From assembly GCF_022045235.1 (NCBI RefSeq), contig NW_027266275.1:61070001-61134000 (forward strand): 64,000 nucleotides of DNA, written 5' to 3'. Numbering within the stretch: position 1 is the first letter of the stretch; every line of letters begins with the position of its first letter. The notes under the pieces were generated by a model that saw nothing but the letters and a program-made list of their open reading frames with translations, made no database searches and was not told the DNA's origin. Made by a program: the position numbers and the translations under genes. Shown piece after piece: positions 18,436-48,150 of the stretch. The stretch comes from Haliotis cracherodii. Its lineage: Eukaryota.

Positions 18436-21400
18436 GTGTTGTGAGAAAGCAGGGCAGGGGATCTAGACCAGGGGTCATCGTCGCCAGGGTCCAGTCCGTT
18501 GAGCAGAAGATACAGATTTTGAAAAATAAAATAAAATTAAAAGACAATAGATCATTCCCGAATGTGTTTATTGAGAATGATTTACCATATGATGTTCGAA
18601 ACACTGAGGCATCTCTCCGTACCCTGTTGAGAGAGATGGGTAAGGACAGAGTACCATGTACGTGGTACCCGTCTCATCAGGAATGGGAGACAATAGGACA
18701 CCAGGCGTCTTAGACTGAGTTGTTAGAACTGTAGTGGGTGGTCTTTGAAAGACAATGATAATTCGAACTTTAGAAACGATGTCTTATTGTGAGGAAATTA
18801 TGATATTATAGGTTTGAGTGAGACTTTTTACGTGATGATGAGAAAATCACAGTTCATGTAGATGGCTACCAGTGGATAGGGCATAACAGAATGACATTCG
18901 ATAAACATGCTAAAAGGGGATCAGGTGGGGTTGGGTTTTTAGTTAAGGAAATACTTCTTGATTTTTATGACTGTTCTGTACTTAACAATGAATATGAAGG
19001 GATTCTGTGGATAAAGCTGAGCAATAAGAGTGCAACCTACATATACTGTGTGTGTTACCTACCCCCCTGCCTGCTCCTCTCGCTATGGGACTGACCCCTC
19101 AGCGTTCTTCTCTACACTGCGTCAGCATGTTTATACTTACCAGAACGATGGAGTGTTGTGTATATTTGGAGATTTCAATGCTCGGAGTGATGACAGTGAT
19201 TATATCGAAGGGGTAGACAGAGTACCGGCACGTTCTGTCATAGACCAAACATGTAATGTGCACGGACAGGAGATGATAGACTTTCTTGTAGACTGCAATA
19301 TGTGGATGTTAAATGGTCGCATCGGCAAGAACGATTTCACGTACGTATCGACGCGTGGTAAGTCTGTAATTGACTATGTGTTCGTGCCCCACGAACAATT
19401 ACCCCTGTATACTGATTTCTCTGTGGTGTGGATGAGTGATTTCATCTGAGAAAGGCAATTAGTAGTACCACATGCTATACCTGATCACTCCATCATTGAG
19501 TGGGTCACTGATGTACCTGTGTTCGCTCACAGTAGAGACAAGGACACTCAACCTGCAGGGGGAGAGCATATACGGCGCTTCAACGTGAAAGATATCCCAG
19601 GTGTTTTTCTGCAGGATGGGAACTCCGAGGCTGTTGTGGCTGCCATATAGCGTATAGAAGATAGTCTGTCTACACAGAGAAATATCAACTCAGCATACGA
19701 TGAATTTGTGTCTCTTATTACCAAGAGTCTTGATGTTTTCTGCTCCACGAACTCGAAATCACCTAATGCTACTACCCGACACAAACGCACCGGTAAACCG
19801 TATTGGAATCGGGAGTTACAACTCCAGTGGAATAAAGTGTGTCAATTGGAACGTCAGTGGCGACGAGCTAACAACCAGGGACAGAAACGGAACCTACGTA
19901 GACTATACTGTAGTCAGAGAACCCACTTTGACAAGTTGCATAGAAAGGTTAAAAAATCATACCAGCTAAAAGAACAGAGCAACTACAGTATTGTAATTCC
20001 TCAGTATTTTGGAAATCCTTTGGTAAAATTGAAATTGGAAACGATCGCAAAGTCCGTATTCCCATGGAAGTTGCTAACGATGATGGTACCGTAATAACCG
20101 ACCCTGAACTCGTCATGAAAAGATGGAGAGATGACTACGAAGTGCTCTACCACGACAACACCAACACAATGTCCTTTGATGATACACACCTGTCGTTTGT
20201 ACGTAACTCTTTGACGACGGATGACGTCACAACGGTCCGTGATGACATAACAGCCATCAACCGTGAGATAACTCGGGATGAAGCCAAGGCTGTTGTTTGA
20301 CTCTATACCAGCTGAAGCAATTAAGAACGATGTTTGTATTGACATTCTCCAAAGGTTGATCGAATACTGTTTCGAGAGCGGATGTGTTCCTGAGTCTTGG
20401 AAATCTGGAATTATCAACTTTATCGTTAAACCTGGCACCACTGATGTTCGGCAACCACTAACATACAGAGGTATTTGCTTGATTTCAGTCCCGTGCAAGG
20501 TATATTGTGACATTATCAGCCTCCATCGAAGATCATCACTTATTAGCTGAGGAGCAAAATGGCTTCAGGAAACAACGTAGCTGTATGGACCATATATACA
20601 GCCTGTATGAGATTATCAACAACAGGAGATGCTCTGACCAATCTACTTTCGCCTGTTTCATCGACATGAAAAAAGCGTTTGACAACGTAAACAGAGACTG
20701 CGTATGGTATAAATTGAAAATGTCAGGTATTGGAGGACCAATGTTGAAAGCAATTCAATCTCTATACGAAGGGGTCAATTGTGCTGCTCGGATAAACGAC
20801 TCTTTAGCTCCATGGTTTAAAGTACAAAATGGTGTTAAGCAAGGATGCCTTTTCTCACCAAGCCTTTTTGCCATTTATATTGATGACCTTGCTCGCAGCA
20901 TTAAGAACTTGAACTGTGGTGTTAAATGCGAATAAAAGTATTCCTCTCTATGCAGACGACATAGTGTTACTTGCACCGACATAAGAATATTTACAAATGA
21001 TGCTCGACAAAGTTCATGAATGGTGTTTTAAGTGGAGATTGGAGCTTAATAGTGAGAAGTCTCAAGTCGTTCACTTCAGACCAGGCAGGCGAGAATGCTC
21101 CAAAGTAACGTTTAAATGTGGTGATATTACATTGAAATACACGCAGTCCTACAAATACCTCGGCCTCTGGTTCTATGAACATTTGGACTTCAAGACAGCG
21201 ATCAACCAGTTGGCAAAATCGGCAGGCAGAGCTCTGAGTGCACTTTTCACCAAGTTTTGTGATGCAGGTGGAATCGCTATGAGGTATTTACTGCCCTCTA
21301 TAATTCTTTGATCCAGCCTGTTCTGACGTATGGGGCAGGTATTTGGGGACTCTATGAACACATATGCCTTAACACAATCCAAAACAGAGCGTGTCGCTTT

Positions 21401-22163
21401 TTCCTTGGAGCCATTTGTAAAACTTCGAAAATCGCTACGAGAGGAGTTATGGGTTGGACCTCTTGTGTAACCAAAAAGCGTCTTGAGGTCTTCAGATTGT
21501 GGATGAGAGTAGGACTTATGCACGAATCCAGACTACCTAACAAGATACATAAGTGGTCGCTCAACCGGAAGAGATCCTGGGAACACCGAGTGCAGAAGCT
21601 GAGTTAAGCCTTGGGACTTGAGCAATACTTAACCGCAGTTAATTCTAAATCCACTGTACAACTTATTCGCAAGCAGCTGAACATTCAGGGTGAACAGAAG
21701 TGGTGTACTGACCTAAAGGACGATAAAGGACAGTTAACAAACGGAAATAAACTTAGGACTTATCGCATGTTTAAGAAAGACCTGTGCCCAGAAGCTTATG
21801 TAACCAATACAATGTCTAGACACCACCGCAAGTCCTTCATACGACTGAGACCCTGCAGTCTGCCTCTGTGTGTAGAGACAGGCAGATATTCTAAGCCACC
21901 TATTCCACTTCATGACAGAATCTGTCCTCTCTGCCCCCTAGAAATCGAGGATGAAGCCCATTTAACCATCACCTGCCCACTCTACTCAGATATAATGTAC
22001 GATGTCTTCAAGTATGCCCTGAATGTAGACGATGAATTTACGCATAAAAACCCAACAGAAAAATATGTTTTTAATGCAAAATCCTAATTGCCAACTCTTA
22101 CTTGCTTCTAAGATTCATCGCATGGTCAGAAGAAGGAATACTATTTTATGATTTATGTAGTTA

Positions 22164-22327
22164 NNNNNNNNNNNNNNNNNNNNNNNNNNNNNNNNNNNNN
22201 NNNNNNNNNNNNNNNNNNNNNNNNNNNNNNNNNNNNNNNNNNNNNNNNNNNNNNNNNNNNNNNNNNNNNNNNNNNNNNNNNNNNNNNNNNNNNNNNNNNN
22301 NNNNNNNNNNNNNNNNNNNNNNNNNNN
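22164..22327. other. N gap in a (TG)n-type tract; other gaps near 25916-26122, 43407-43694 and 47133-47314
   Basis: N runs at paralogous microsatellite positions. Confidence 0.95.
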
Positions 22328-22887
22328 TGCATGTGTGTGTATGCGTGTATGTATGTGTGTGTATGCGTTCGACTGAATGCATGTTTGTGCGAGAATCTAT
22401 GTTGTTGATAGACCTGTATGATTGTTCTCATACAGGTTTATGTATAATTCATGTTTTAATTATATATTGAATGTATGTACTGTTTGTCATTTGTACTTTC
22501 TTAACTTATTGTTGTTCTGTTATATTTTAGATTATAGTGTCTCATAGGCCATATGGCCGGGTGCCTTTTATAATTCTATGAATGTACATTTTGTATTTTA
22601 TCATATGATATGCACGTGACACTTAAATATACATTTCCCTCTCTCGGTCTTGGATCGCCTGGGTGACGGTATAGCGAGACAGCGGTAGCGCTATAGCGTG
22701 GTAACTGAGCTGGAACTTCTTATTCTAGTCATAGCACACATGGCAATAAACGTTAGTCATATGCCGCAAAGGTTTAACCTCATAAAAATAACACCCCCCG
22801 ACGTTAGTTCATTCTACTACATCTTTTGGAGGCGATATCAAAGGCGCAGCCCAGCTGCCTGCTTGTGAGTGAGGTATCTATACATTG

Positions 22888-23115
22888 CTTTTGTTTTGTT
22901 TGTTTGTTGTTTAACGCCGCACTCAGGAATATTCCAGCGGCGGTCTGTAAATAATCGAGTCTGGACCAGACAATCATGTGATTGACATCATGAGCATCGA
23001 TCCACGCAATTGGGATCGATGACATGCATCAACCAAGTCAGCGAGCCTGACCACCCGATCCCGTTCGTCGCCTCCTACTACAAGCATAGTCGCCTTTTAC
23101 GGCACGCATGGGTTT
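22888..23115 (-). mobile_element. 5'-truncated SINE family A (paralog near 44255-44482)
   Basis: Reverse complement of the family A body and (CAAA)n tail. Confidence 0.88.
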
Positions 23116-23825
23116 TATCTGTACATAGAATGTTTGAGGGTACAACACAGAAGGCAAGCATTGGTTGTATTTGTGCATAGAATGTTTGAGGGTACAACAC
23201 AGAAGGCAAGCATGGGTTGTATCTGTACATAGAATGTTTGAGGGTACAACACAGAAGGCAAGCATGGGTTGTATCTGTTCATAGAATGTTTGAGGGTACA
23301 ACACAAAAGGCAAGCATGGGTTGTATCTGTACATAGAATGTTTGAGGGTACAACACAGAAGGCAAGCATGGGTTGTATCTGTACATAGAATGTTTGAGGG
23401 TACAACACAGAAGGCAAGCATTGGTTGTATCTGTTCATAGAATGTTTGAGGGTACAACACAGAAGGCAAGCATGGGTTGTATCTGTACATAGAATGTTTG
23501 AGGGTACAACACAGAAGGTACACATGGGTTGTATCTGTTCATAGAATGTTTGAGGGTACAACACAAAAGGCAAGCATGGGTTGTATCTGTACATAGAATG
23601 TTTGAGGGTACAACACAGAAGGCAAGCATGGGTTGTATCTGTACATAGAATGTTTGAGGGTACAACACAGAAGGCACACATGGGTTGTATCTGTACATAG
23701 TATGTTTGAGGGTACAACACAGAAGGCAAGCATGGGTTGTATCTGTACATAGAACGTTTGAGGGTACAACACAGAAGGAAAGCATGGGTTGTATCTGTAT
23801 ATAGAATGTTTGAGGGTACAACATA
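23108..23825. repeat. Second, unrelated 52-bp minisatellite, about 14 copies
   Basis: Unit atgggttgtatctgtacatagaatgtttgagggtacaacacagaaggcaagc. Confidence 0.95.
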
Positions 23826-26800
23826 GAAGTTGAATGTCTTTTCCTGAAACCGGTTTGGTAGTCGTAAAACAGCATCTGTACCGCCAACTGGGTAAAATGG
23901 TTTGCTTGTACCAAGGCCATCAAAAGTAAGGGGTTTTTTTTCAGTATATCGCCGCTATGAAATTGGTCTATACCGAAGTGTCCCAGGATGTTCTATGCCC
24001 ATTTCCGACATCGTCCATAATCCAATCTTCAAACGGTTTGCTTGAACCAACGCCGTCAAAAGCACCGCTCGCGGGACATCACCGCTATGAAACTGGCTTG
24101 TGTCGGAACGTCACCCATTTAAGACGTCGTCCATATTCGAGAAACTTCAAAGTACACCGGGAATCGCCTTCATGCGAATACCTAAAATTACCGTGCAGTG
24201 ACCCCAATACAACACGTGGCTGTGAAGGCCTTGGATAGCGTTAGCGCTTGGGGGACAAAATGGCGCCCTTGTGTCAAGCAATTCGGCAGTGAAGGAAAGC
24301 GAGCGCTCCGAATGGTTAAATGGCTCCCGGTCGGTACTATGTATTATAGATCAGATCGTCTTGAATTGGCACCGCCATTTTGTTTAAAACAATTGCAAGT
24401 GGTATGAGTGATTGAATCCACTCCTGTTAATCACACTGGCTTCGTCATCACATTGTTATCTTTGTACATTCATCCCACCATGTGTTGTGTAAACATATCA
24501 TGATAAACGTCCTCAGCATCACCTGATGAAGGAGCAAGAAGTAACTCTGAAACGCCGTGAACAAAGAATAAAAAAAGTTACTATCCATAAAAAAAAGTTT
24601 CATGTCATCATTTTCTTCTAACTTGTAAATGCCTTCAGTATGATACGCCTTTGTGTACAAATAAATAATGAAATAACTGGTCAGCGTATTTTGCTAAAAG
24701 CAAGGCACCGAACAGGAAATGTTATTTTGTTATTTCTATGTGCAAGTCTTTTGAAAACATACGAAATGAATGTAATATGCAATTTCCCATTCACCCGATA
24801 CAGGGAGATGCATCCAAACTGAAGCTGTTGCTTATTTAGCAAATTCCCGAATACTGCGCCCAACACCGAAGTTATCCATGAAATACCTGGGCCCACCTGC
24901 ACAAAGCGAACTTAGTACTGCGATTATCGTAAGTCTATGTTAAAGTATGGGAGTTACGATCATCTATCGCCAACATCGCTCTGCACACATCACTGATTGA
25001 ATACGCACTTATAAAATCTCAGTAGACAATTGAGGTCTGTTAGCGAGCGGAAGTTGTTTAAGTTCGACAGCTACTTAATTGCAATTACGCAGAAACTATG
25101 TAAGCCGATCATTCAAAGTGTGAACTTTAGATTGTGTGGGACTACTTTCACTGTTTATAAACCAACATGGCGTCGCCCTCGTCATTCGGCGATCGAGTCA
25201 GAATTAACCATCGTGAATCTGGATAAACTTCAGGGATAATTGCTATCATTATCAAAAGAACAGTCTAATATACTGAAAATCCGTGTTTAACTGTGACGTA
25301 TCTAAGGCATTTTATAAGTTTTGGCAACTTTGGAGATATAAATTTAGAAACATTTTTTGCGAGGGCACGAGGCCTAGCCGAGCGGGAACAATAGCCATAT
25401 CTGTGCTTGTAGACCTCTGCGGCTTGAAACCTTCTCCACAAATTAAAATGGTTTTATTTGGCTGAAATATATTTGAATTGTTACCTTGTTTCTTTTAGTC
25501 GCTGTGTGTACATCTGACTACACTTCTTGACATTATGACAGAGGGCAGTTACTCTAGCGGACAGACCGATGGATTGCCGCGAAAGGCAATTAAAAACAAT
25601 TGTTGTTTTGCGTATATGTTGCTTGGCACTGGATAAGAAACAGATTTTCGGTTGGAACTATATTGGCTACTGCCACTGTCCAACTGACATATCACTTACC
25701 CTATGACGTAATAAATATTAATGCGCCCATTCCAGGAAAACTCGCAATGTTTCGGTAATGTTTGTGAGATAGGGAAAGCGATTTTGAAGAACAGAATTAA
25801 AGAATGACATTATATGATAAAGAGGTTATCACGCTTGTGTGTTTGGTGATGGTAAATATCATGTATTAGGAATAAACACTATGCATTCCTAGAGGATATT
25901 TACCATCCCCAAACANNNNNNNNNNNNNNNNNNNNNNNNNNNNNNNNNNNNNNNNNNNNNNNNNNNNNNNNNNNNNNNNNNNNNNNNNNNNNNNNNNNNN
26001 NNNNNNNNNNNNNNNNNNNNNNNNNNNNNNNNNNNNNNNNNNNNNNNNNNNNNNNNNNNNNNNNNNNNNNNNNNNNNNNNNNNNNNNNNNNNNNNNNNNN
26101 NNNNNNNNNNNNNNNNNNNNNNNACTGAAGACATTAAATTACAAGACTTAATAAACCATAATTTAATGTATAAAATTACAAACACTAATGCGACACGACA
26201 TCACACATTCAGCCTGGAAATACATATCAACCACCCGATGCCCAATTCGTCTCTTTCGGCGAGAACAGAACCTGTTACGTTGATCCTGTATCGTCAGTGG
26301 GGTGGTGACAGGAGCAATGTTGCGAGAGTAGAGGAATCTGGATGGGTAGGAGGGATGTTGATAAGTACAAATGCGAGTGAGCTTATTTTCCACATCCTAA
26401 TTGGTGTAGAGTGAGTGAGTATAGTTTTACTCCGCTTTTAGCAATATTTCAGTAATATCACGGCGGGGGACACCAGAAATGGCCTTCACACATTGTACCC
26501 ATGTCGGGAATCGAACCCGGGCCTTCGGCCTGTCGTGCGAACGCTTTAACCATAAGGCTACACGAAAGCCACAAATGCGTCTAGAGATGGAGATAGTTAC
26601 AGACTCAAGATATCTCTACAGACTCCATATATTGATGCCTGTACGAACCATCAACTTCTTAACACTCAGCAATGTTTGTTTTACGCCACACCCATCCGAT
26701 GGATTGAGCTATGAGCTACGTCTCCCACTGTCAAGATAGTATGCCACACAATCAACCAAGTCACCGAGTCTGGGGTCCTATCCAAAATATTCTGAGAACT

Positions 26801-26952
26801 TCTCAGAGATCTTGCTCTCTAAGAATGTTTATGAATACCCACCTCGACCGCCAGATCCATTTAATCCAATCAAACGACGAACATAGATTGCCGGAAACCT
26901 ATAGCACATAGAATCCCACAAGTTGAAACACCTGATGAAAATAGCTCCCCGT

Positions 26953-27983
26953 TCATTCCATTCCAGTCCATTTGGGGTAAAAAAAACTTGAATAGTCACT
27001 ACTAAACAATTTTCGTAATACAGATCCTTCTCTTGCTGGGTATTTATAATACACAACAGTACCATTGTTTAGAAATCCAGACCACCATCCATACGTCCCG
27101 GTAGTTTGAATCAAATGATCACATCTCGCCATAATGGCCATATCTGCTATCGCTGTACCTCCAGTCACATGTATGACGCTACTGTCCTTCAGAAGATCCT
27201 TTAAGAAGTCAGGGGACTCAGTTGCAAGGACGAAAGTCACGTGACTGTACCTCGAGCGGAAGTACTCCATTGCACGTTTAATGTATTCCACTGGGGCAAG
27301 CTGATAACCAAAATCTTGGTAATATTTCGCGACTAAGTCCCCTCTTCTGTAATGGATGCCGACTAAGGTGGCACTCGCGTTGGCTGTCAATGACCTTTCC
27401 TCACGAATCTTATTAAGAATACCATCTGCCAATGCTTTTGTAGAATCTGAGAAAACAAATTGACTCCGGATTTTGTCCTCGACGTGAGGGAAGTATCGCC
27501 ATGACTGCAAATAACGTTCTATCCTGACATTTCTGTTTGAGTCGAACTTGGTCAATGCTTGGTCGAAGTCACACGGACGTTTTTCGACCAATTTCAAATG
27601 ACCGCTCAGTGACTGAATCTTCATAATTGTCGCGTCCAATTTGAAATGTTTCACCAGCGGGTTGCTTTCATCAATGGCAACACTCATATTCTTTCTCGAC
27701 GCAATACCATAAATAGATGCATAAGTAAACATCAGGTTTCCAAGGCGACCAGATTCCATACATATGATGAAATGTTTGTTTCGGTTTTCCGAAATACTGT
27801 TAGACGGGGTTTTATTCAGGTTTTGGCTCGGTGTTCCTATAGTTGTCTGCTGATTCTCCTCGCCGCCATCTTTGATGACGGACTTCGAAGGTTCTACGAC
27901 TGTTGGTAGATGACTTGACACGTGGAATCCGTACACCACTATGGAGGCAATACCAAGTAGAACCATATATATTAGTTTTCGAT
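26953..27983 (-). CDS. Alpha-1,2-fucosyltransferase (GT11), copy 2, main coding exon
   Basis: Same motifs and intact. About 40 aa differences from copy 1 and 4 from copy 3 (manual count). The ORF-track extension to 28092 is probably intron. Confidence 0.93.
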
Positions 27984-30900
27984 CTGAAACAAAAATATTA
28001 TTGAGTGAGATATTCGTCTTTTCTTCATGGTTTCTGCAATATGATCTCGGGGGACGCCATGGATGGACATAAATATATAGAGAATCGAACATGGGTTTTC
28101 AACTTGAGAACGAACTCGATGCTCAGTGCACGACTAATAAGCTAACCTGTTCTTGATGGGAACTGTAGTTAGTCGTCCGTCAATTGAACTACAGTAGTTT
28201 CGACAAAATTTGAACATGAAATCTGGTGGTTTTAGTGGGGCAGAAAGGTCCTGGCTCTATCGTACCATGCCCGATGTCCTATAAACTATATAAATATCGG
28301 ACTGTTGAAAAACAAATGGATTGTCTGTCACAAAAATTACATTGTCAAATAGTATATGAAATTGACGATCCCTAAATGGGGGCCCTTTAGGAGTAATTTA
28401 AAAAAAGCAATATATACAGTTGTCCGAAGAAATTACTTCTAAATGCATTTATACAGAAGACTGGTAGCCATGAAACTAATGTAGCAAATATATTTACCTC
28501 TTTTAAAAACATGCTTCCAGGTGACGTCCCGACAGACCATCTTGCAAACAGGATTCACGTCTACAGTTTTCCCAAACCTTTCCAGATGCACCTGTGGATC
28601 ATCACAAAACAACATAGTTTTAAAATCGGAGTTGAAAAGAATTGTACTAGCTAAAAGCGGCATAAAGCCATACTCAAACACTTTTACTAAGGCCATTATT
28701 TCGACTGCTGCTAATGCGCGATGTCGGGCAACAAACACTTACTGTTTTATACAAATTGTGTGAGTGGCGGGTGCTACCGGTAGGGCAGGTAATGCTTCCC
28801 CTTTTCGCGAACAGCTTGTGTCATCAGTGGTTTTCAGTGATCCAAGCATATAATTTTCACCACAATATGGCCCTCTACGATCAAATGAATATATTTTGTA
28901 GGATAATCGAGACTGGTTACTCTCTGGCGTTGATGTTCTATATCATCATTATCCATCTTCAGCCTTTATATCCATTATTCACATCTAACAGAATTTACTA
29001 TAATTAACTATTTAACTAAAAGTGGTGTATAGTATACACAAAACACACACTTTATATAACATAATATTATAATTTACTTTTCTTCCTTTATGTCCAATAT
29101 TCACATCTCACGTGCACATAATTTGTTTCTGTCGATTACGAATAATAATCTGTTGAGCCATACCAAGTAGATATTTTCATATTGACAAATGATTCTTTGC
29201 GGTAAATAATGATTGATTTAGTGTTGTTTTTAACCACCGCCAGACATATCCAACCTATCTCACTACGGCTTGTAAATAGTCCCGTCTGGCCCAGACAAAC
29301 CACTGGTGGATATTTTGAGAATATTTCATCGAGATACCACAAAAAATGGTATAACTCAGTACACTGATGTGGCGGGGCAGTTGGCCTGGGAGACATTTCA
29401 TCTATCTATCTATCTAGATATCTAGAGAGAATACAAAAGTTACTATTACTATAATTAAAATACAGCTACTATAATTAACTATTTAACTAATAGTGGAGCA
29501 TAGTATACACACAACGTGTTACATGTTTATATAACCACGCACTGTTACACGGGAATAAATATGAACAAATCTGTATATTACACGGCTGTTCTAGATGCCA
29601 GTGGCTTTTAAGTGTATAAATAAAATTTGATATTATGGGAAACTCTCCACACCCAATTGCAATGGACACGATGGTTTTCGTCCTTAACCCCTTGGATGCG
29701 AGAGTGACAACGCAGAATGAATTCTCGGACAAGTCTCAGCAATATCTTTTATCAAACCGGTTTAAATATTTGTAGTTAAACACAATCGGGTAGGAAATTT
29801 TATATTCTATATTTTTACGTAATTTTATAGCCGGGAGTAGATACAGTGCCGCGTGAGCGCAATTCTCGCATAACCCTCGACCCGTGAAGGTCCGGGGTAG
29901 AATAGGTCTTTAGCAACCTATGCTTGCCGTAAAAGGCGACTATGCATGTCGTAAGAGGCAACTAACGGGATCGGGTGGTCAGGCTCGCTGACTTGGTTGA
30001 TGCATGTCATCGATGCTCATGATATCAATCACTGGATTGTCTGGTCCAGACTCGATTATTTTCAGACCGCCGTCATGTAGCTGGAATATTGCTGAGTGTG
30101 GCGTTAAACAACAAACAAACAAAGCATAACCTTCACTTTTCAGGTCTTAGGAAAATGTGCGTCAGAAAAATTAACTTGGCATCCAGCGAGGGTTAACAAC
30201 AACAAATATGTGACGAATAGCGAGGGGTGCATTCTACTCCTGAAAATCCCCTCAGGTTTGCAACAAATGATTGAACATGGTTTTAACCGATATACCCAAA
30301 CGCCATGTTTCTCTCGCTTGACCTAACACGAATGCCCCCACGTCTGATTGACATTAATCCCTTGAAGACGCTTAGCTAATTATAAGGTTCACTTGGGGGC
30401 TAAATACAGTGACCACAGAACCCCGAACGATAATATGTCAAAATGATCTTCTGCATACTTTGTATGAACATATCTAATACCCTCAACCAGGTCACACCAC
30501 CATCAACTAGAGCCCCGATCATGGATACGACAGAAGGCCGCTATTCCACACGAACGCTCTTCGTCCGAGCCGTTGTTTGTTATGTAACGGATACAGTTAC
30601 TGGATGATGTGTTTCGCCAATCTGCTGGTTGATACAAAATATGCATGTGGTCAAATGGTTTTGTTGTGTGTGTTGCTATGGCACCGATCACCTGCATCTC
30701 AGTGTGTGCCATTCTTCACGTTGGAAATGAAAGATTAACCATCTAATGTGTATATGATCGATTGAGTGAATAGCATGAATATTTTCTGTACTAAAACAGG
30801 ATCCAGCACATAGTTAATACATAACATGAACAGACAGAGAAAAGATTTCCGCCAGTAAACCCTGCTTCACATTTTGTCTGGGTTAGGGCAACCTATCCAT

Positions 30901-30992
30901 AACACTAACACTAACCCGATCTCAACATAAATGATTTTTTTCAATACTTCTAGCCGGGGTTATGATGTTTCTAAATTTCGAGAAACATTTAC

Positions 30993-31008
30993 CTTGACAG
31001 TAGTACAT
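30993..31008 (-). CDS. Putative first coding micro-exon of FUT copy 2
   Basis: Identical ATGTACTACTGTCAAG|gtaaat. Confidence 0.5.
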
Positions 31009-34000
31009 ATGCTGACATAAACGAATTAACGGACGTCATAAACTGGTTGCGTAAAAACAAAACAAAACAAAACAAAAACGCCCAGTCTCTTTACGACTTT
31101 CGATCTGGATCAAAACTTCAGATCCAAATGGTCTACTGCTTCATTTGTATTGTATAGAAACCAATGTTGGGTAGAATAGTGTTGGCAGCAATATTCATTG
31201 TGTCAGCTGAACCAAAATAATCACTGTACGAATCGATTCTCCTCCTGTCAATGCAGTGTAACATAAAAGATAGTAACTCTCTTTCGCATAAGACTGTATA
31301 TAGTATCAAGCTTGACACATAAGCTATGAATAAAACTGTCCCTCAAAAATCAAGCTCGTCTTACCTCCTCCCTCACCCTTTACCGTCCTCAAGTGATGTC
31401 AATTGCAAAATGCCAATCAGTAACATTGAGCCCGCAGGTAGACTGGTGTCCGTGTCTGCGCATGTTCGGTTTATTACAGCCTGAGGCCGAATAAGCGATG
31501 CATTGTTATCGACACAATAGTAAGCTTATTACATAGACAATTGTTCCAAGACAAGCGCGACTTGATGCCTGCTTGTCAAGAGCCAAATACCAAGAATTAA
31601 TCTCATACCGCCAGAGAGTATGGATAATTAAAGAGTTTCTAATTAATTTGTACTGTACATCGACACAATATCTGATAATAATTATACAGTTTTTAGACCC
31701 TTAAAGGGACAAGACATCTATCAATCCATCATTATATCCTTGTTATCCTCTTTTATCATCCGGTCGTGTATACTTGTTCCCAAATTGAAATAAAAAAATC
31801 TAAAATGTCTTGTATTCCTGTTAGTACTTCCCTTCTTTATAGCAGATGAAAAACACATGAACGGACTGCGTAAGATGTGACGATGTGGCAAAGGTACTCG
31901 GCTTGCAGCAAGGAACCGTGGGTAGAAGAACGATTGGCTTCATACGACCGAGGCCTATATGGAGGTGAAGGGGTCGTTGTCGGCAACTCTACTTCTCAAC
32001 CGCCAACCGAAGAGATAATATTTTAACATACACGTCTAAGACACTCTCGCAGTTCCCCAAAACGCAGATCTCTTCAAAGTAAATTTATCTGATACTTTGT
32101 CCTGCTCTTGTGAAAATCCATGTGAAAAACAACATACACGTCTTTCTTGAATGTCTCAATTACACTATTCCCCAAAATGTCATGTTCGCTCACATTAATT
32201 AGAGCTGGAAGTTCACGTACAATGCAACATATTCTCTACGGTGATGATGTCCCTCGCCGTGATATTGCTGGAATAGTGATAAAAGCGGCGTAAAACCATA
32301 CTCACTCACTCACTCTACGGTGATGAATCTAAAGGTGAAGGTCACACTAACCTCATTTTCAACAGTGGTGGTATGGTGTCATGTAAATACGATAGACATG
32401 AATTATCAATAATACTGTAAATTGTACAAAGCTTTTTTCTTGTAAACTTGCAACTTGTAATTTGTATATGGAAGCATACCCACAGCATGAAAAACACTTG
32501 CTACTCGTCAGTCTACAACAACTCAAAACAGTCAAACACATTGTGTTATTCTATCCCCGGGAACCACTTGTGAATAGGCTAGTTGTTTAGAACAATATGC
32601 TTTTTATCAAGATCAATTTAAATTTGATTTCAGCGTTTTCTCTATACCCTTTTATGCATGTTTATGTTGCTTTATCTTATTGCTGATGTCAGTGTTCACA
32701 ATTCTCGTGTATCTTTATGATACACTTTAAAAATGTTTCTCCTTCCTAATCTAACGTTATAACACTTCAGATCATAACAATCATCTGATACACAGCAGAT
32801 GATGACTAGACATGTTGTATTTGGTTTTATTGTCCGTAAGGTCTTAAAATTGATTTTATTCGTCATTAAATCTTATGTCTAGTGCATATTTTCACAAACA
32901 GGACTGTTAGCTAATATAAGGAATCTAACATCCATTTGATCTTCCAGTTATCTTACTGACTGTTTTTTTTATCAAATAAGAGGATATACAACACACGTCA
33001 GACTAAGTAGAGACATTTTATGGATAACAATTTCTTTAGTTACATTTAGACATTAAGGTACAGATCCTTATACCGTTGTCAAACAAGGCAAGGATCTTTT
33101 CCGGAACATCCACCTTACAGTAAATATCGAAGTTGTTATCCATAAATTGTCTCTACTTTGTCATCCGGCGAAGAAATGCCTATCAAACATGTCATATGTC
33201 AGTCTGTTAACGAAGTTTTTTTCATATTTTGAAAAAGATAGTTGTGACAGGAAGGATTGTATGGTAACTGTAGCAGACAGATTGACAGACGTTATTGACG
33301 AGAGTTGCGTGTAACACCAGGTTATTTCAACGGCAGTGGCCTCGTAGAATGTTACTATACTTTAAGTGTTTCTGTGGGCAGTGACGGTCGTAATTCAAAC
33401 TCCTTGCACACTGACACCGCATCAACGTTATTTGTGCATCGCAACAACTTTTACTGACAGGGTGGGGAAGTTGGGTTGTGGTTCACGCGGAACGGACGAC
33501 ACTGTCTGTGTTTGCTGGGCTGCACCTTTGATATCGCCTCCAAAAATGTAATAGAATGACCCATTAAACGATGCTACACATCAAGAAAGCGTAGAAAGAA
33601 CAAGATTCGTTCGTTTGGTATATCAAGGCACCAATTCATCTTTCATAATTTTTTTACTTACTTACTTACTTACTTTGGAGATTTAACGTGCGCTTTCCGA
33701 CTGATGAGTATTTCGCACACGGGCCCAGCCAGGCCATTTAATGTGTTTCCGAAAGGGGCGAAAGTGGTCTGTGCATAATTTTTGTGTGTCTTCATGCCTT
33801 ATATATCCACAGTTAACGAAAACATGGACTACATGTATAAACATTATATATATATATATATATGTATATATACAGGCTAGGTATTTGCCCACAGCAACAC
33901 CTGCATAACTGTTTATTCACGCGTGGTGTGGCAGATTGTAATTAAACGATTAAACGAGAGCAGATATTGTAGACTCACCTGTAAATTGGGCCGACTCTGT

Positions 34001-37000
34001 AATTAGACACAACTTTGTCTGAGGCGAGTGACATTGTGCATTCAAGAGTAAACTGACCTAATTATAAGAAGAAAAGATTTTACTGAAGGTATTAGCCAAT
34101 TCGCATATTCAAAGAGACAGTTACAATGAATTGCGATTAGTGCGCTTTACTGGGCGCACTTCTTCAGATCCAATTAGCGTTGTGGGCGCTAATCAGTGCA
34201 TTAATTTGATTTGCTAAGCATTTTAGAAGCATTAGGTGTGGGTGTGTGTGTGTTGAAGATACTGTTATTAATGTCCTGGAGTACGCTGATGACCAAGCGC
34301 TACTCGCTGAAAATGAAAACGACCTAAACATGTTAGTAGACTGTCTGAATAGTGAGTGAGTGAGTGAGTTGGGTTTAACGCCGCTTTTAACAGTATTCCA
34401 GTTATATCGCGGCGTGTCAGCTTAATGTGGGAGGAAAGCCCGAAGTGATGCAGGTCTCAGACGTTTACCACTTCGGTGAAACCCACGAGCACGGTAATCG
34501 GGGCGAACCGGGATTCGAACCCACAATCATAGGTTTCTGGCGTGCCCAAGGGACGCAACTCTGCACAGCGAATCGCGGCGCCTTAGACGACTGGGCCACC
34601 CGTGCCCCCGACTGTCTGAATACCTTGTGCCATACCAACAATATGACCGTTAACAAGGCCAAATGGAAGATAATCCACTTCGGGCCTCCATCAATGAAAA
34701 AGACTAACGTTGCGTTTAAGTATGGTGACGAGACTTTAGAAACTGTTGACTCATATTCTTACTTGGGGATTCTACTAACGGAACACCTGGAGTATAAGCG
34801 TGTGGCGAGAGCAGCCGTCGGCTCTGCTAGTAGAGCACTGGGTTTACTCATGTCTAAGTACAAGATGCTGGGCGGGATGGAAGTTCGCACATTTATAACC
34901 CTCTACGACAAAATGGTGTGGTCAACTATAGAATACGGGCATGTATATGGGGCACATACAACATGTGATGTATCAACGCAGGAAAGAACAGAGCTATGAG
35001 GTTTTATCTTGGTCTTAGGAAGTATGCCCAAAAAACCCTGCTGTAAACGGTGATATGGCCTGGATTCCACCTGTTGTACGTCAGTGGTGCAGTACGGCAA
35101 GACTTTATAAAAGACTCTCTTATATAAAGCCGGACAGAATAACAGGCACGATTTATATGAGGTGAAATAGATGGGCTTCCAGAAGAAAACGAAATTTGAA
35201 CTTTAGAATACATCACAAGTTTAGTGAACTGGGCCTTGAACATTTTATTTCTTGTGAAAATAACTTTAATTCGCAATTCACTGTATCTGATGTCAAAAGC
35301 AAGGCTATGGATTTGTATGTGAAGAGTGGAAAGAGTCCATCAAGAAAGGGAGGTAATAAGTTGAGACTCTATTGTAAACTAGTAGGCAACAGCTGTCCAG
35401 CAACGTATGTTCTACTACCTGTGCCTCGTAGTCACAGAAGTGCAGAAGCCAAATTCAGATCTGGTACAGCCTCTTTACACATCGAGACAGGAAGATTTAA
35501 TAAAACACCAGTGAATGAAAGGTTTTGTTCTAATTGCCAAACTTTTATTGAAGATGAAATACATATTTTATTGAATTGTACTGTTTATAATGATGAGCGT
35601 CAACCTCTTTTAGCACAATGCTGTGATATGTTTCCTGGTTTTAATACTCTGAAATACTCTTGAAAAAGTGTCTTTTGTTTTATCAAATAATGTTATGTGT
35701 AATCTTAGTGCCAAAACCTGCCAAGCAATTTTACAAAAACATAAATCGGTTATTTATAACAAAGTGTGATATCTCTTTACTATTTCTATACGTTTGCTGT
35801 ACATAATCTTAAACGTTTTAGTCTCTCATAACACGTACTGTATTGAGCATTGTTGAGTGACCTAATTAATAATTTTATGTTGTTTTATATATGTTTGTAA
35901 ATTTTATACTGTATTACTCGGGTGAGACTTAAATGAACAATTGTCGGTCTGTCTGTCTGCATTAATTTAATTAGTTTAAATAGTACATTAATTAGCCGAG
36001 GCTCTACCACTGGACCAAGAGCGCCATCACGTAAGAGGTGCTCGTTTAACCCGAACGCAGTTCAAAGAAGATTTGATACAAGAAAAAGAAAACTTGAATA
36101 AATATTATCTAATTTAGATTAGGAACACCGACACGCCGACACTATTTACAAATCGTATTAACGATATCGGTACCAATTATTATAGCAAAACCACCCAGAA
36201 AAAGCAGGGAAAATTTGTCAATACAGATTCTCCGAAGTGGTTTGATAAAGAATGTTATGAACAAAGGAAAGAATTTAGATTATGTAAAAAGTGCTTTAAA
36301 AGTTCACCTTACAAACAAAAGAGACAGAATGTGCTACAGCGCCAGAGATTATATAAGAAGACAATAAGGATAAAATCATAACTTGGTCACTTGAAAAATA
36401 AACACTCAAGAGAATTCTGGAAACTTATTTATAAAGATAAAAGGAAAAGACGCGATTGTGATCTAAATATATCAGATTTCTATGAACACTTCAAGGCTTT
36501 ACATTCAGATATAAACTTTATAAATGTGACTGTGGAGGAAGAATTATTGAAAAATGCCTCAACTGAGTGTTATGGTACTTTAAATTCTCCAATAACATAG
36601 GAGGAAATAAATGTAGCTATTAAGCATATGAAAAAGACTTAATCACCTGGTATGGATAATTTTTGATTGAATATGCAAATTTCTGATTGAGGTTATGTGT
36701 AAAGATATCGTCAAATTATTTCATTCTTTATTGGACACGGGGTGTTTTCCATCAATATGGCCAGTTGGTGCTATTGTACACAAGAAGAATTCCCAAGAAG
36801 ACCCGAATAACTACAGGGGGGTCGCTCTTCTAGAGCAGTTTTCGAAAACTCTTCACCAAGGTTATAAATTGTAGATTATGACGTATTTCAAATTTGTTTA
36901 ATTTTATATCTGATGCTCAATATGGATTTAAAGAAGGATGTGGTACCATAGATTTTTATTTTGAATATTTTAATAGAACATATATTTAAAGATAAAGGTT

Positions 37001-38745
37001 AAGTATTTTGTGCATTCATGGAGTATACAAAAGCATTTGATAGTATTTACCGAAATGGGTGGTGGCTTAAACTCAATAAGATGGGAATCGGTGGTAAGTT
37101 TACAATTATGTCCACTGCGCCAAACATCCAATGTATCTTGTGTACACTGCCAGAGGCCAAATATGGCCGGAGTCTAAATAATGCCTGTCTGTCTGTCGTT
37201 AACGGGTCATTTGCACCTCATTAACACGCATGCGCAGTTAAGCAAACAATGATTTGCGCATGTGGGTACTGACATCACATCCCCTATAAACATTTGTCGA
37301 TCAATGTATAATGATGTTTAGTCATGTATTATGTATCAAAATATGTTTAGAGAAATGTTCAGTTACAGCTCTGGACTTAGGCAGGGTGAAACACGCATGC
37401 GCAGTTAAGTAAACAATGAATTGCGTATGTGTGTACTGACATCACATCCCCTGTAACCATTTGTCGATCAATGTATAAATTAAAGATATTTAGTGATGTG
37501 TTAAGTATCAAAATATGTATGGAGAAATATTTAGTTATAGTTCTGGACTTAGGCAGGGTGAAATCCTGTCGCCACTTTTCTTTTCTTTCTTTATTGAAGA
37601 TTTAGAATTTAGTTTGCAAGAAAATTTACAATCTGGCATAGACATAAGTGATCTTATGTTTCTTTTATTACTCCTTGCTGATGCCATGGTCCTAATGAGT
37701 AAAACTGCTTCTGGTCTGCAGGGACATCTTGATAAACTTGCCCATTACTGTAACAAATGGCGGTGGACTGTCAATATTGACAAAAATAAAGTTGTAATTT
37801 TCAGAAAATAATATCAACCATTAGACATACAGTTTTTAAATGAATCAGTTTCTGTAGAAATAGTAAAACAGTTTAATCATTTCGGATTTTTATTGGTGTC
37901 AAATGGTAATCTTACTCCAGCTATCAAAGTGTTATCCGAAAAGGGATTAAAGGCATGTAATAATATTAATAACTGTGATAAAAAAATAAATTGATGTGAA
38001 ATCTTCCTGTGAACTATTTGACACATGTGTGTTACCAGTATTACATCATGGTTGTGAAGTATGGGGTTGGAAAAAAGCTTATTGTATTAAGAGAGTACAT
38101 CGTAAAATTTGTAAATTGATTCTGGGTGCAAAAGATAGTACTACTAATGTGCAGGTATAAGGGGAGTTGGGGAAATTTCCATTAAATATCCAATGTCAAG
38201 TATGTATGGTTAAATATTCGTTTAAGGTCATGTCTTCTTGTCTACTACTTGTATAATAAAAGACATGTATACGACTGTATGTAAAATCACACGAACAACT
38301 GGTATAGTAAAGTCTATATTTTTTGTCAGAGAATGGCTATTACCATGTGTGGATTTAACCTTGTAACGTAAACGTTTCTTCCTTTTGTAAAGTACTGAGG
38401 CAGCGTCATAAGATAATTATATAACACCGTGGAATCGAGAATTAAGAGAATTGTCATATCTTTTATATAAACAGTTTAAGCCAATCTTTGGCATAGAAAA
38501 GTATATTAGTAGTGTATTGATTTATAATCATAGAGTCGCACTTACTAGATTGAGATTATCATCTCATGCTCTCCGAACTGAAACTAGGGGACATGGTAGT
38601 AACAGGATTGCACGGGGGAGAGAAAATGTATAAAATGTAATATCAACGACGTGGAAGCTGAATGTCACTTTGTATTAATTTGTCCTTTCTATAGAAAAGT
38701 GAGATGTTTGTTTATTAAGAAATATTATTATGTAAAGTCATCAGT

Positions 38746-41700
38746 TACCTACCCTGATTGAGTAAGTCGTGTTGTCATTTGCTCTCATACTATTTTAAAT
38801 ATATCGATATAAAGGAACTTTTCTGAAGCTCTGTCGAAAATAGACACCCGACAATGAATCAGGACGCATCTACAAAGCGAAAATCCGGCGAAAACACCCC
38901 AGAATTAGTAAAACAGCAGAAGACGCCGACCCACGAGTTGGGCGATTGTGATTTTGTCAAGTGTGTAATGGCCGCTCCCGTCCCCACCCGGGTCGAGACA
39001 GAGACGCTTCTCCATGCGTCCGCATGTGCCAATTAACTCTTTAAAGTGCTATTTCTATGACAGAATGTGTAAAATGGAGGCACGAATGATGGAGCAAGTT
39101 ATGATTGCATTCAGGACTGAGATTACTGCAGTGAGAGATGAGTTTCAGTCTCACATCGACAAACTTACTGATAGAGTCCTGGGGATTGAAAAGACTTATG
39201 CTTCTGTCGTAAAACAAGATTCTTCTCAATCTGCGACGTTTGTTGTGAAAAATCTTAAGTTTGATGAAAACGAAGATAGTGATGAAAACGTGACTGTAAA
39301 CAAAGTGCAGTGTGTGGGTCGAGACGGACTCCAGCTCCGAGACGTGAAGGTGGTGAGTGCAGTGTGTGGGGCGAGACGGACTCCAGCTCCGAGACGTGAA
39401 GGTGGTGAGTGCTGTGTGTGGGGCGAGACGGACTCCAGCTCCGAGACGTGAAGGTGGTGAGTGCAGTGTGTGGGGCGAGACGGACTCCAGCTCCGAGACG
39501 TGAAGGTGGTGAGTGCAGTGTGTGGGGCGAGACGGACTCCAGCTCCGAGACGTAAAGGTGGTGAGTGCAGTGTGTGGGTCGAGACGGACTCCAGCTCCGA
39601 GACGTGAAGGTGGTGAGTGCTGTGTGTGGGGCGAGACGGACTCCAGCTCCGAGACGTGAAGGTGGTGAGTGCAGTGTGTGGGGCGAGACGGACTCCAGCT
39701 CCGAGACGTGAAGGTGGTGAGTGCTGTGTGTGGGTCGAGACGGACTCCAGCTCCGAGACGTGAAGGTGGTGAGTGCAATGTGTGGGTCGAGACGGACTCC
39801 AGCTCCGAGACGTGAAGGTGGTGAGTGCAGTGTGTGGGGCGAGACGGACTCCAGCTCCGAGACGTGAAGGTGGTGAGTGCAGTGTGTGGGGCGAGACGGA
39901 CTCCAGCTCCGAGACGTGAAGGTGGTGAGTGCGGTGAGAAAGCAGGGCAGGGGATCTAGACCAGGGGTCATCGTCGCCAGGGTCCAGTCCGTCGAGCAGA
40001 AGATTCAGATTTTGAAAAATAAAATAAAATTAAAAGACAATAGATCATTCCCGAATGTGTTTATTGAGAATGATTTACCGTTTGATGTTCGAAACACTGA
40101 GGCATCTCTCCGTACCCTGTTCAGAGAGATGGGTAAGGACAAAGAGTACCATGTACGTGGTACCCGTCTCATCAGGAATGGGAGACAATAGGACACCAGG
40201 CGTCTTAGACTGAGTTGTTAGAACTGTAGTGGGTGGTCTTTGAAAGACAATGATAATTCGAACTTTAGAAACGATGTCTTATTGTTAGGAAATTATGATA
40301 TTATAGGTTTGAGTGAGACTTGTTACGTGATGATGAGAAAATCACAGCACATGTAGATGGCTACCAGTGGATAGGGCATAACAGAATGACATTCGATAAA
40401 CATGCTAAAAGGGGATCAGGTTGGGTTGGGTTTTTAGTTAAGGAAACACTTCTTGATTTTTATGACTGTTCTGTACTTAACAATGAATATGAAGGGATTC
40501 TGTGGATAAAGCTGAGCAATAAGAGTGCAACCTACATATACTGTGTGTGTTACCTACCCCCCTGCCTGCTCCTCTCGCTATGGGACTGACCCCTCAGCGT
40601 TCTTCTCTACACTGCGTCAGCATGTTTATACTTACCAGAACGATGGGGTGTTGTGGTGTGGATGAGTGATTTCATCTGTGAAAGGCAATTAGTAGTACCA
40701 CATGCTATACCTGATCACTCCATCATTGAGTGGGTCACTGATGTACCTGTGTTCGCTCACAGTAGAGACAAGGACACTCAACCTGCAGGGGGAGAGCATA
40801 TACGGCGCTTCAACGTGAAAGATATCCCAGGTGTTTTTCTACAGGATGGGAATTCCGAGGCTGTTGTGGCTGCCATACAGCGTATAGAAGATAGTCTGTC
40901 TACACAGAGAGAAATTAACTCAGCATACGATGAATTTGTGTTTTTTATTACGAAGAGTCTTGATGTTTTCTGCTCCACGAACTCGAAATCACCTAATGCT
41001 ACTACCCGACACAAACGCACCGGTAAACCGTATTGGAATCGGGAGTTACAACTCCAGTGGAATAAAGTGTGTCAATTGGAACGCCAGTGGCGACGAGCTA
41101 ACAACCAGGGACAGAAACGAAACCTACGTAGACTATACTGTAGTCAGAGAACCCACTTTGACAAGTTGCATAGAAAGGTTAAAAAATCATACCAGCTAAA
41201 AGAACAGAGTGTTTTACTGGATCAACTACAGTATTGTAATTCCTCAGTATTTTGGAAATCCTTTGGTAAAATTGGAATTGGAAACGATCGCAAAGTCCGT
41301 ATTCCCATGGAAGTTGCTAACGATGATGGTACCGTAATAACCGACCATGAACTCGTCATGAAAAGATGGAGAGATGACTACGAAGTGCTCTACAACGACA
41401 ATACCAACACAATGTCCTTTGATGATACACACCTGTCGCTTGTACGTAACTCTTTGACGACGGATGACGTCACAACGGTCCGTGATGACATAACAGCCAT
41501 CAACCGTGAGATAACTCGGGATGAAGCCAAGGCTGTTGTTTGACTCTATACCAGCTGAAGCAATTAAGAACGATGTTTGTATTGACATTCTCCAAAGGTT
41601 GATCGAATACTGTTTCGAGAGCGGATGTGTTCCTGAGTCTTGGAAATCTGGAATTATCAACTTTATCGTTAAACCTGGCACCACTGATGTTCGGCAACCA

Positions 41701-44012: not shown

Positions 44013-44474
44013 GGTCTTGGATCGCCTGGGTGACGGTATAGCGAGACAGCGGTAGCGCTATAGCGTGGTAACTGAGCTGGAACTTCTTATTCTAGTCATA
44101 GCACACATGGCAATAAACGTTAGTCATATGCCGCAAAGGTTTAACCTCATAAAAATAACACCCCCCGACGTTAGTTCATTCTACTACATCTTTTGGAGGC
44201 GATATCAAAGGCGCAGCCCAGCTGCCTGCTTGTGAGTGAGGTATCTATACATTGCTTTTGTTTTGTTTGTTTGTTGTTTAACGCCGCACTCAGGAATATT
44301 CCAGCGGCGGTCTGTAAATAATCGAGTCTGGACCAGACAATCATGTGATTGACATCAAGAGCATCGATCCACGCAATTGGGATCGATGACATGCATCAAC
44401 CAAGTCAGCCAGCCTGACCACCCGATCCCGTTCGTCGCCTCCTACTACAAGCATAGTCGCCTTTTACGGCACGC

Positions 44475-45036
44475 ATGGGTTTTATCTGTACATAGAATGT
44501 TTGAGGGTACAACACAAAAGGCAAGCATGGGTTGTATCTGTACATAGAATGTTTGAGGGTACAACACAGAAGGCAAGCATGGGTTGTATCTGTACATAGA
44601 ATGTTTGAGGGTACAACACAGAAGGCAAGCATTGGTTGTATCTGTTCATAGAATGTTTGAGGGTACAACACAGAAGGCAAGCATGCGTTGTATCTGTACA
44701 TAGAATGTTTGAGGGTACAACACAGAAGGTACACATGGGTTGTATCTGTTCATAGAATGTTTGAGGGTACAACACAAAAGGCAAGCATGGGTTGTATCTG
44801 TACATAGAATGTTTGAGGGTACAACACAGAAGGCAAGCATGGGTTGTATCTGTACATAGAATGTTTGAGGGTACAACACAGAAGGCACACATGGGTTGTA
44901 TCTGTACATAGTATGTTTGAGGGTACAACACAGAAGGCAAGCATGGGTTGTATCTGTACATAGAACGTTTGAGGGTACAACACAGAATGAAAGCATGGGT
45001 TGTATCTGTACATAGAATGTTTGAGGGTACAACATA
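44475..45036. repeat. Second 52-bp minisatellite, about 11 copies
   Basis: Same unit as 23108-23825. Confidence 0.95.
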
Positions 45037-48000: not shown

Positions 48001-48150
48001 TCAGAGATCTTGCTCTCTAAGAATGTTTATGAATACCCACCTCGACCGCCAGATCCATTTAATCCAATCAAACGACGAACATAGATTGCCGGAAACCTAT
48101 AGCACATAGAATCCCACAAGTTGAAACACCTGATGAAAATAGCTCCCCGT

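What the first reader, a model, noticed from the sequence alone, without database searches (positions are those of the whole stretch)
29590..29830. Middle FUT copy is a chimera: copy-3-type coding exon behind copy-1-type upstream DNA
Seen: left of about 29670, unit 2 shares structural features with unit 3 (the gcactgttacacggg... block, intron blocks, a 4-aa-distant CDS, no 3' SINE). From about 29695 it matches unit 1 (ttggatgcg, attctcgg, cacaatcgggtagg...ccgggagtag) and keeps everything unit 3 has lost. Some scattered sites in the right half still match unit 3, which I read as unit-1-specific changes. Inference: the order A1-B1-A3'-B1'-A3-B3 is the expected product of unequal crossover between an older two-gene pair. 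The gene is on the minus strand and the switch falls in its intron, so a new enzyme/promoter combination would have been created. That is a way to re-wire which glycan-modifying variant is expressed where.
Basis: partly seen in the sequence, partly recalled or inferred. Interest (0 to 1): 0.8.

Follow-up and report, generated by a model that had tools for sequence, protein, structure and literature searches.

The report
Chimeric middle fucosyltransferase gene copy
The middle of three tandem fucosyltransferase genes is a hybrid, with the coding exon of one neighbour behind the upstream DNA of the other; this is the textbook product of an unequal crossover, so it is clear but ordinary.

Summary
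Three intact GT11 (alpha-1,2-fucosyltransferase-like) genes lie on the minus strand. Unit 2 is about 1% from unit 3 and about 5% from unit 1 up to base 29668. From 29673 onward it is about 1% from unit 1 and about 5% from unit 3. A maximum chi-square scan puts the break between 29668 and 29695 (chi2 86.9; largest of 10,000 permutations 23.7). A 7-bp deletion private to unit 2 sits exactly at the switch.

The pattern is one head-to-tail duplication, 4698-29672 matching 29673-50882. Its ends fall at homologous positions of two older paralogues.

The claim that the switch lies in the intron is plausible but unproven. A consensus acceptor sits 17 nt before the ATG. A locus-specific conserved block with TATA-like, initiator-like and donor motifs lies 1.7 kb beyond the switch. 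No RNA evidence was obtained.

Read evidence was uninformative, so a haplotype false duplication is unlikely but not excluded. Later conversion patches complicate the simple picture.

This is a new example of a well-known process. Any regulatory rewiring is untested.

The parts
2059..3072 (-). Unit 1 coding exon (337 aa, GT11)
   Evidence: Open reading frame. Pfam PF01531, E = 4e-30. Acceptor AG at 3091-3090.
26953..27966 (-). Unit 2 coding exon (337 aa from the conserved ATG). The open frame runs on to 28092, but that stretch is probably intronic.
   Evidence: It differs from unit 3 at 4 amino acids and from unit 1 at 40.
48151..49164 (-). Unit 3 coding exon (337 aa, GT11)
29669..29672 (.). 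Switch interval. The last unit-3-type marker is 29668 and the first unit-1-type marker is 29673. A conservative interval is 29598-29694.
   Evidence: Alignment; maximum chi-square scan; 200-bp windows.
29673..29674 (.). Site of a 7-bp deletion private to unit 2, exactly at the switch. Units 1 and 3 keep the 7 bases at 4699-4705 and 50884-50890.
4698..29672 (.). First copy of the recent tandem duplication: unit-1 upstream DNA, the 52-bp minisatellite, the spacer, and the unit-2 coding part.
   Evidence: Self-BLAST. Substitution divergence from the second copy is mostly 0-2%.
29673..50882 (.). Second copy of the recent tandem duplication: unit-2 upstream DNA, the short minisatellite, the spacer, and the unit-3 coding part.
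29516..29605 (.). Block shared by units 2 and 3 and not alignable to unit 1. It is the last structural marker of unit-3 type.
30371..30828 (.). Segment present in units 1 and 2 and absent from unit 3. It is the first structural marker of unit-1 type.
27984..27985 (-). Consensus splice acceptor (pyrimidine tract then AG), 17 nt before the ATG. It is conserved in unit 1 and partly in the fourth gene.
31200..31490 (-). Conserved block found only upstream of the four genes of this cluster. It is a candidate core promoter plus non-coding exon 1: a TATA-like element at 31476-31470, CAGT with its A at 31444, and donor-like sites at 31384|31383 and 31365|31364. In unit 2 it is of unit-1 type.
   Evidence: The motifs were read by eye, so this is an inference.
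29879..30126 (.). SINE shared by all three units, with thousands of copies in the genome. It lies 200 bp to the right of the switch, not at it.
35566..36000 (.). Second patch where unit 2 matches unit 3 against unit 1, including a 36-bp indel. It is probably a later conversion tract.
14171..18438 (.). 52-bp minisatellite inside the duplicated block (about 82 copies). Its partner at 39304-39936 has about 12 copies.

Best explanation
An older pair of GT11 fucosyltransferase units stood in tandem: the unit-1 type and the unit-3 type, about 5% apart. A misaligned homologous exchange (unequal crossover, NAHR) took place in their upstream DNA, between unit-1 position 4694-4697 and unit-3 position 50879-50882. 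It produced a chromosome with one extra unit. That extra middle unit carries the unit-3-type 3' flank, coding exon and proximal 1.7 kb. It is joined to unit-1-type distal upstream DNA, which includes the candidate promoter/exon-1 block. Both parental genes remain intact on either side, as in an anti-Lepore chromosome.

Shown here: the switch of nearest neighbour, the contiguity of the duplicated block, the intact reading frames, and the young age of both halves. Inferred: that the exchange was a meiotic unequal crossover, that the switch lies in the 5' intron, and that unit 2 is therefore transcribed under unit-1-type control to make a unit-3-type enzyme. Small conversion tracts later blurred the pattern.
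For: Self-BLAST shows 4698-29672 matching 29673-50882 head to tail.

Substitution divergence:
- u2-u3 left of the switch: 0.96%
- u1-u2 right of the switch: 1.3%
- spacers: 0.3-1.2%
- unit-1 type against unit-3 type: 5.0-5.5%

There is a single sharp break, with chi2 86.9, permutation p < 1e-4 and Fisher p 5e-18 (windows). The junction lies at aligned, homologous positions of the two parents.

Private changes are balanced between partners, 8 against 9 on the left and 4 against 4 on the right, as expected for sister copies. Unit 2 keeps more than 10 kb of unit-1-type DNA that unit 3 lacks, and the spacer S is duplicated as well.

The junction combines a unit-3 letter, a unit-1 letter 5 bp away and a private 7-bp deletion. 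That string cannot arise by threading shared k-mers.

The only four N runs sit at homologous places with TG/CA-rich flanks. No N runs occur in 188 kb of other loci from this genome. The window therefore looks gap-free.

The genome's size and sequence count match a published HiFi/hifiasm assembly (PMC9709981). This is a lead only.
Against: No read-level confirmation was obtained. The raw run gave less than 1x depth in unique bins, and the contigs collapse the paralogues.

The 1-1.6% divergence between the duplicates is about the same as allelic heterozygosity, if the genome is the published one (1.56%).

Divergence along the duplicates is strongly uneven: chi2 74 on 17 df, with 0 mismatches over about 1.5 kb in one place and 3-5% over about 2 kb in another.

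A private 7-bp deletion exactly at the switch, and one unit-1-like marker at 29597 left of it, are not what a clean exchange leaves. A second unit-3-like patch lies at 35566-36000.
Confidence: 0.8

Rival explanations
1. Heterotype false duplication. The animal has two units per haplotype, and the assembler placed the second haplotype of the 21-kb interval in series. The middle unit is then an artefact joining the allele of unit 3 to the allele of unit 1.
For: Copy divergence of 1-1.6% lies in the range of allelic heterozygosity. The uneven divergence, with stretches of zero, resembles allelic coalescence. Other notes on this genome report suspicious tandem duplications. Read depth could not be evaluated.
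Against: No molecule in a two-unit genome links unit-3-type DNA to unit-1-type DNA in this order. The junction string is unique, with markers 5 bp apart plus a private deletion. No true gaps are evident in or near the block. In-line false duplications usually sit at gaps or depth gaps (PMC9516828). The parents share only about 765 bp at 95% identity at the join, which long accurate reads would span.
Confidence: 0.08
2. Gene conversion in an older three-unit array. The middle unit was overwritten from unit 3 on its left and from unit 1 on its right, with no change in copy number.
For: Small conversion tracts clearly occur in this cluster: the patch at 35566-36000 and the u0-u1 tract in the coding sequence. 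Over about 35.6-37.5 kb unit 2 is 3-5% from unit 1, which could be an unconverted remnant.
Against: Two tracts totalling more than 20 kb would have to abut at one point. The spacers S and S' and the minisatellite are also about 99% alike, so the whole period is young. Outside the patchwork, unit 2 shows no stretch with a lineage of its own.
Confidence: 0.07
3. A replication-based or end-joining tandem duplication whose two ends happen to lie in the paralogous upstream regions, rather than a homologous exchange.
For: A 7-bp deletion sits exactly at the junction, flanked by only 1 bp of microhomology.
Against: The two ends are at exactly aligned positions of the paralogues, inside a 62-bp stretch identical in all three units. 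That is very unlikely without homology guiding the event.
Confidence: 0.05

Closest known systems
Haemoglobin anti-Lepore chromosomes and fixed HBB/HBD chimeric genes of mammals (PMC4041002)
   Same: An unequal crossover between two tandem paralogues. The hybrid gene has its 5' side from the downstream parent and its 3' side from the upstream parent, and both intact parents flank it. The promoter type and the coding type are recombined.
   Different: Here the switch lies in non-coding upstream DNA (probably the 5' intron), so the protein itself is not a hybrid. The family is a GT11 glycosyltransferase in an invertebrate. Expression consequences are unknown.
Human FUT2-SEC1P fusion allele se(fus) (PMC10000471; Koda et al. 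1996 as cited there)
   Same: The same enzyme family (GT11 alpha-1,2-fucosyltransferases) in a tandem cluster, rearranged by unequal crossover between paralogues.
   Different: se(fus) is the deletion (Lepore-type) product. Its breakpoint lies inside the coding region and it inactivates the enzyme. The case here is the duplication product, with all reading frames intact.
Heterotype false duplications in assemblies (PMC9516828)
   Same: Adjacent near-identical copies whose divergence is similar to heterozygosity.
   Different: No gap lies between the copies. The junction sequence is unique and chimeric, and no haplotype of a two-unit locus could supply it.

Membership tests
GT11 (Pfam PF01531) alpha-1,2-fucosyltransferase family | Profile match above the curated cut-off over nearly the whole domain | tested here: met
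   All three ORFs score 97-105 bits against a cut-off of 23.9 and cover profile positions about 30-298 of 298.
GT11 (Pfam PF01531) alpha-1,2-fucosyltransferase family | Conserved HxRRGD motif and C-terminal G-T-x-G-W-W motif (features recalled from knowledge of the family) | tested here: met
   IHYRRGD and GTYGWWSGF are present in all four translations.
GT11 (Pfam PF01531) alpha-1,2-fucosyltransferase family | Fucose transfer in alpha-1,2 linkage | not testable with these tools
   This needs an enzyme assay.
Anti-Lepore-type unequal-crossover duplication | A hybrid unit between both intact parental units, in the same orientation | tested here: met
Anti-Lepore-type unequal-crossover duplication | One switch of nearest neighbour at homologous positions of the parents | tested here: met
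   Break at 29669-29672, chi2 86.9, permutation p < 1e-4. A secondary patch exists at 35566-36000.
Anti-Lepore-type unequal-crossover duplication | Both halves equally young and much younger than the parental divergence | tested here: met
   0.96% and 1.3% against 5.0-5.5%. Local divergence is uneven, however.
Anti-Lepore-type unequal-crossover duplication | Physical confirmation: reads spanning the junction and one extra copy in read depth | tested here: inconclusive
   Unique bins of the raw run were below 1x, the contigs collapse the paralogues, and no listed piece crosses 29333-30101.
Anti-Lepore-type unequal-crossover duplication | The reciprocal deletion allele, or the two-unit ancestral allele, exists in the population | not tested
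   Contig depths in a second individual (X2) differ from those in X1, but they fit no model consistently.
Heterotype false duplication (assembly artefact) | A gap or depth gap between the copies, and haploid-level depth | tested here: inconclusive
   The N runs sit at homologous microsatellite-like places in both copies and nowhere else in about 250 kb, so they look like masks. Depth was not interpretable.
Interparalogue gene conversion | Short tract with no change in copy number | tested here: not met
   The unit-1-type stretch runs for more than 10 kb and includes DNA absent from unit 3. The spacer and minisatellite are duplicated too.

The most novel reading that the evidence does not exclude
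The extra unit may be a young copy-number variant that is still segregating. This GT11 cluster may diversify by repeated modular exchange between its members. Evidence for such exchange includes the promoter/exon-1 module of unit 1 joined to the catalytic exon of the unit-3 type, the 97-98% identical u0-u1 tract inside otherwise diverged genes, and the conversion patches. On this reading, recombination rather than point mutation sets which fucosyltransferase variant is made where.
Probability: 0.15. Interest if true: 0.5.

Novelty: new member of a known kind. Interest (0 to 1): 0.27.

Why it matters
This is a clean example of how a tandem gene family gains a member whose regulatory and coding parts come from different parents, resolved to within 4 bp. 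The two enzyme types differ at 40 of 337 residues. If the middle gene is expressed under unit-1-type control, the amount or location of the unit-3-type enzyme would change. The mechanism itself is textbook and no expression data exist. The practical value is mainly for annotation: three real genes, not two, and not an artefact. It also marks a candidate copy-number variant for population studies.

Tried and rejected
No independent assembly could be checked.
- The single read-laying run was dominated by the SINEs at 29.9-30.1 kb and 32.1-32.5 kb. The raw run was sampled at about 1 in 100. Contig depths (X1 36-60, X2 8-21) fit neither a 3:2:2 nor a 2:1:1 model consistently, so I draw no copy-number conclusion. 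Because the tool states that not all differences were counted, the absence of a '7 bases put in' row at 29673 is not evidence.
- No RNA run of the same species could be laid. The RNA-like run X17 comes from a related organism and covers only the 3' half of the coding exon.
- The fourth gene (u0) failed as an outgroup. It is 97-98% identical to unit 1 in mid-CDS and unalignable at its 5' end. The apparent excess of changes on the unit-3-type lineage (28 against 6) therefore cannot be polarised.
A smaller sample was used instead.
- The large protein searches were not run, because Pfam settles the family.

Full report
**What is in the window.** Three intact ORFs on the minus strand match Pfam PF01531 (glycosyl transferase family 11) over almost the whole profile. 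They are unit 1 at 2059-3072, unit 2 at 26953-27966 (its open frame runs on to 28092) and unit 3 at 48151-49164. The window is G000:C12:61070001-61134000 of a 1.18-Gb animal genome. The genome holds at least 37 GT11-like matches. A fourth cluster member (u0, 78% amino-acid identity) lies 9.5 kb to the left of the window.

**Repeat architecture.** Self-BLAST shows two layers.
- A young layer: 4698-29672 matches 29673-50882 head to tail. The period is 24,975 bp against 21,210 bp. The difference is mostly a 52-bp minisatellite with about 82 copies against about 12.
- An old layer: the unit-1 type against the unit-3 type.

Counting substitutions only:

| Comparison | Divergence |
|---|---|
| u2-u3 over 26124-29668 | 0.96% (34/3545) |
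| u1-u2 just right of the switch | 1.3% (9/696) |
| spacers | 0.3-1.2% |
| u1-u3 and u2-u3 right of the switch | 5.1% and 5.0% |
| u1 against u2/u3 in the coding part | 5.4-5.5% |

**The switch.** Unit 2 follows unit 3 up to 29668. This includes the 166-bp insertion at 29051-29216, the 29516-29605 block, and the lack of the SINE-like element that unit 1 has at 1560-1790. Unit 2 follows unit 1 from 29673.

Of 149 informative sites, the split is 111:8 (u2 with u3: u2 with u1) on the left and 4:26 on the right. The maximum chi-square is 86.9 between 29668 and 29695, against a largest value of 23.7 in 10,000 permutations; Fisher p = 5e-18. In 200-bp windows d(u2,u3) jumps from 1/200 to 16/200, and d(u2,u1) falls from 39/197 to 0/200. 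Private changes are balanced between partners, 8 against 9 on the left and 4 against 4 on the right, as expected for sister copies.

The two markers that bracket the switch are 5 bp apart. A 7-bp deletion private to unit 2 sits between 29673 and 29674. One unit-1-like letter at 29597 lies left of the switch. It may be a change private to unit 3, or patchy repair.

**Reading.** The young layer is one contiguous tandem duplication, and its single novel junction is the switch. The junction lies at exactly aligned positions of the two older paralogues, inside a 62-bp stretch identical in all three units. This points to a homology-guided unequal crossover between the upstream regions of the two older units.

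In the direction of transcription the gene order is u3, u2, u1. The hybrid has the 5' side of the downstream parent and the 3' side of the upstream parent, and both parents are intact. That is the anti-Lepore configuration (PMC4041002). The same enzyme family shows the reciprocal, deletion-type product in the human FUT2-SEC1P fusion allele (PMC10000471).

**Complications.**
- Divergence between the duplicates is far from uniform: chi2 74 on 17 df for 500-bp windows of the upstream part.
- There are no mismatches over 20709-22163 against its partner.
- Divergence is 3-5% over about 35.6-37.5 kb. Some of this reflects a local duplication of about 130 bp in unit 2.
- At 35566-36000 unit 2 again matches unit 3 against unit 1, including a 36-bp indel.
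- u0 and unit 1 are 97-98% identical in the middle of the coding exon but unalignable at its 5' end.

Small conversion events are therefore frequent in this cluster. They were superimposed on the crossover product.

**Gene structure (inferred).** On the minus strand a pyrimidine tract and an AG (27985-27984) lie 17 nt before the ATG at 27966. The same arrangement is present in unit 1. The coding exon is therefore very probably preceded by an intron. The extra 42 codons of the 379-aa ORF in units 2 and 3 are probably intronic, because unit 1 lacks about 100 bp there.

A 290-bp block at 31200-31490 is conserved upstream of all four cluster genes and occurs nowhere else in the genome. Read by eye, it holds a TATA-like element, a CAGT about 32 nt further on, and two donor-like sites (ACG|GTAAAG and GGAG|GTAAGA). 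If this is the promoter and exon 1, the switch lies in a 3.4-kb 5' intron. In unit 2 the block is of unit-1 type (23 sites against 9).

No transcript data for this species could be laid.

**Coding consequence.** Units 2 and 3 differ at 4 of 337 residues (K109T, E189D, S262G, M336I). Unit 1 differs from them at 40-42 residues. dN/dS is 0.37 and 0.6 respectively. All frames are intact.

**Real or artefact?** Twenty-four runs were listed. The single read-laying run was dominated by SINE reads. The raw run gave less than 1x depth in unique bins. Logan contigs collapse and mix the paralogues, and no listed piece crosses 29333-30101. Depths gave no consistent copy ratio. Read support is therefore undetermined.

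Several indirect arguments favour reality.
- The junction string is unique and could not be produced by threading shared words.
- No haplotype of a two-unit locus links unit-3-type DNA to unit-1-type DNA in this order.
- The only four N runs lie at pairwise homologous places with TG/CA-rich flanks, and none occurs in 188 kb of other loci. They look like masks rather than gaps. I did not try to fill them.
- The genome's size and sequence count (1,182,234,246 bases, 80 sequences) nearly equal those of a published HiFi/hifiasm abalone assembly (1,182,252,637 bp, 81 scaffolds, about 52 gaps per Gb, heterozygosity 1.56%; PMC9709981). This is a lead, not proof.

Against this, the 1-1.6% divergence between the copies equals that heterozygosity. 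A heterotype false duplication (PMC9516828) therefore cannot be excluded on divergence alone. If the unit is real, it is young enough to be polymorphic.

**Verdict.** The intron placement is plausible. The regulatory rewiring is untested. This is a new, well-resolved example of a known process, so interest is modest.

The large protein searches were not needed.

Noticed in passing
window -9559..-8570 (G000:C12:61060441-61061430) and window 2490-2790: The fourth GT11 gene (u0) is 97-98% identical to unit 1 over about 300 bp in mid-CDS. It is below 62% identity in the stem/5' end and in the 3' flank. This points to an older conversion or chimerism within the same cluster.
   Followed up: partly
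window 31200-31490; also 6230-6520, 51915-52200, and -2398..-2106: A conserved block specific to this locus lies upstream of all four genes. It carries TATA-like, CAGT and donor-like motifs and is a candidate promoter plus non-coding exon 1. Unit 3 has a 9-bp deletion at the TATA-like element.
   Followed up: partly
window 22164-22327, 25916-26123, 43407-43694, 47133-47314: The four N runs lie at pairwise homologous positions of the two duplicate copies, with TG/CA-rich flanks and different lengths. No N runs occur in 188 kb of other loci from this genome. They look like masked simple repeats rather than assembly gaps.
   Followed up: partly
window 20709-22163 vs 41950-43406: There are no mismatches over about 1.5 kb between duplicates that are 1-2% apart elsewhere. 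This suggests recent homogenisation, or shared ancestry of this segment.
   Followed up: no
window 35566-37500: A patchwork inside LINE-derived DNA. It includes a tract where unit 2 equals unit 3 with a 36-bp indel, a cluster of changes private to unit 2, and a local duplication of about 130 bp in unit 2 at about 37225-37480.
   Followed up: partly
window 26929-27519: An RNA-like run from a related organism (X17) has contigs with word depth of about 750-1400 on the 3' half of the coding exon, against less than 10 in the flanks. The contigs differ from the window by about 4%. This suggests a strongly expressed orthologue or paralogue.
   Followed up: no
window 28071-28172: Units 2 and 3 carry about 100 bp just upstream of the acceptor that unit 1 lacks. 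This creates the longer 379-aa open frame, which is probably not coding.
   Followed up: no
window 29869-30128: Contigs of two DNA runs join 29869 to 30128, skipping the SINE, but with only 26 letters on the shorter side. This could be a SINE-empty allele or a repeat artefact.
   Followed up: no
window 14171-18438 and 39304-39936: A 52-bp minisatellite has about 82 copies in one duplicate copy and about 12 in the other.
   Followed up: no
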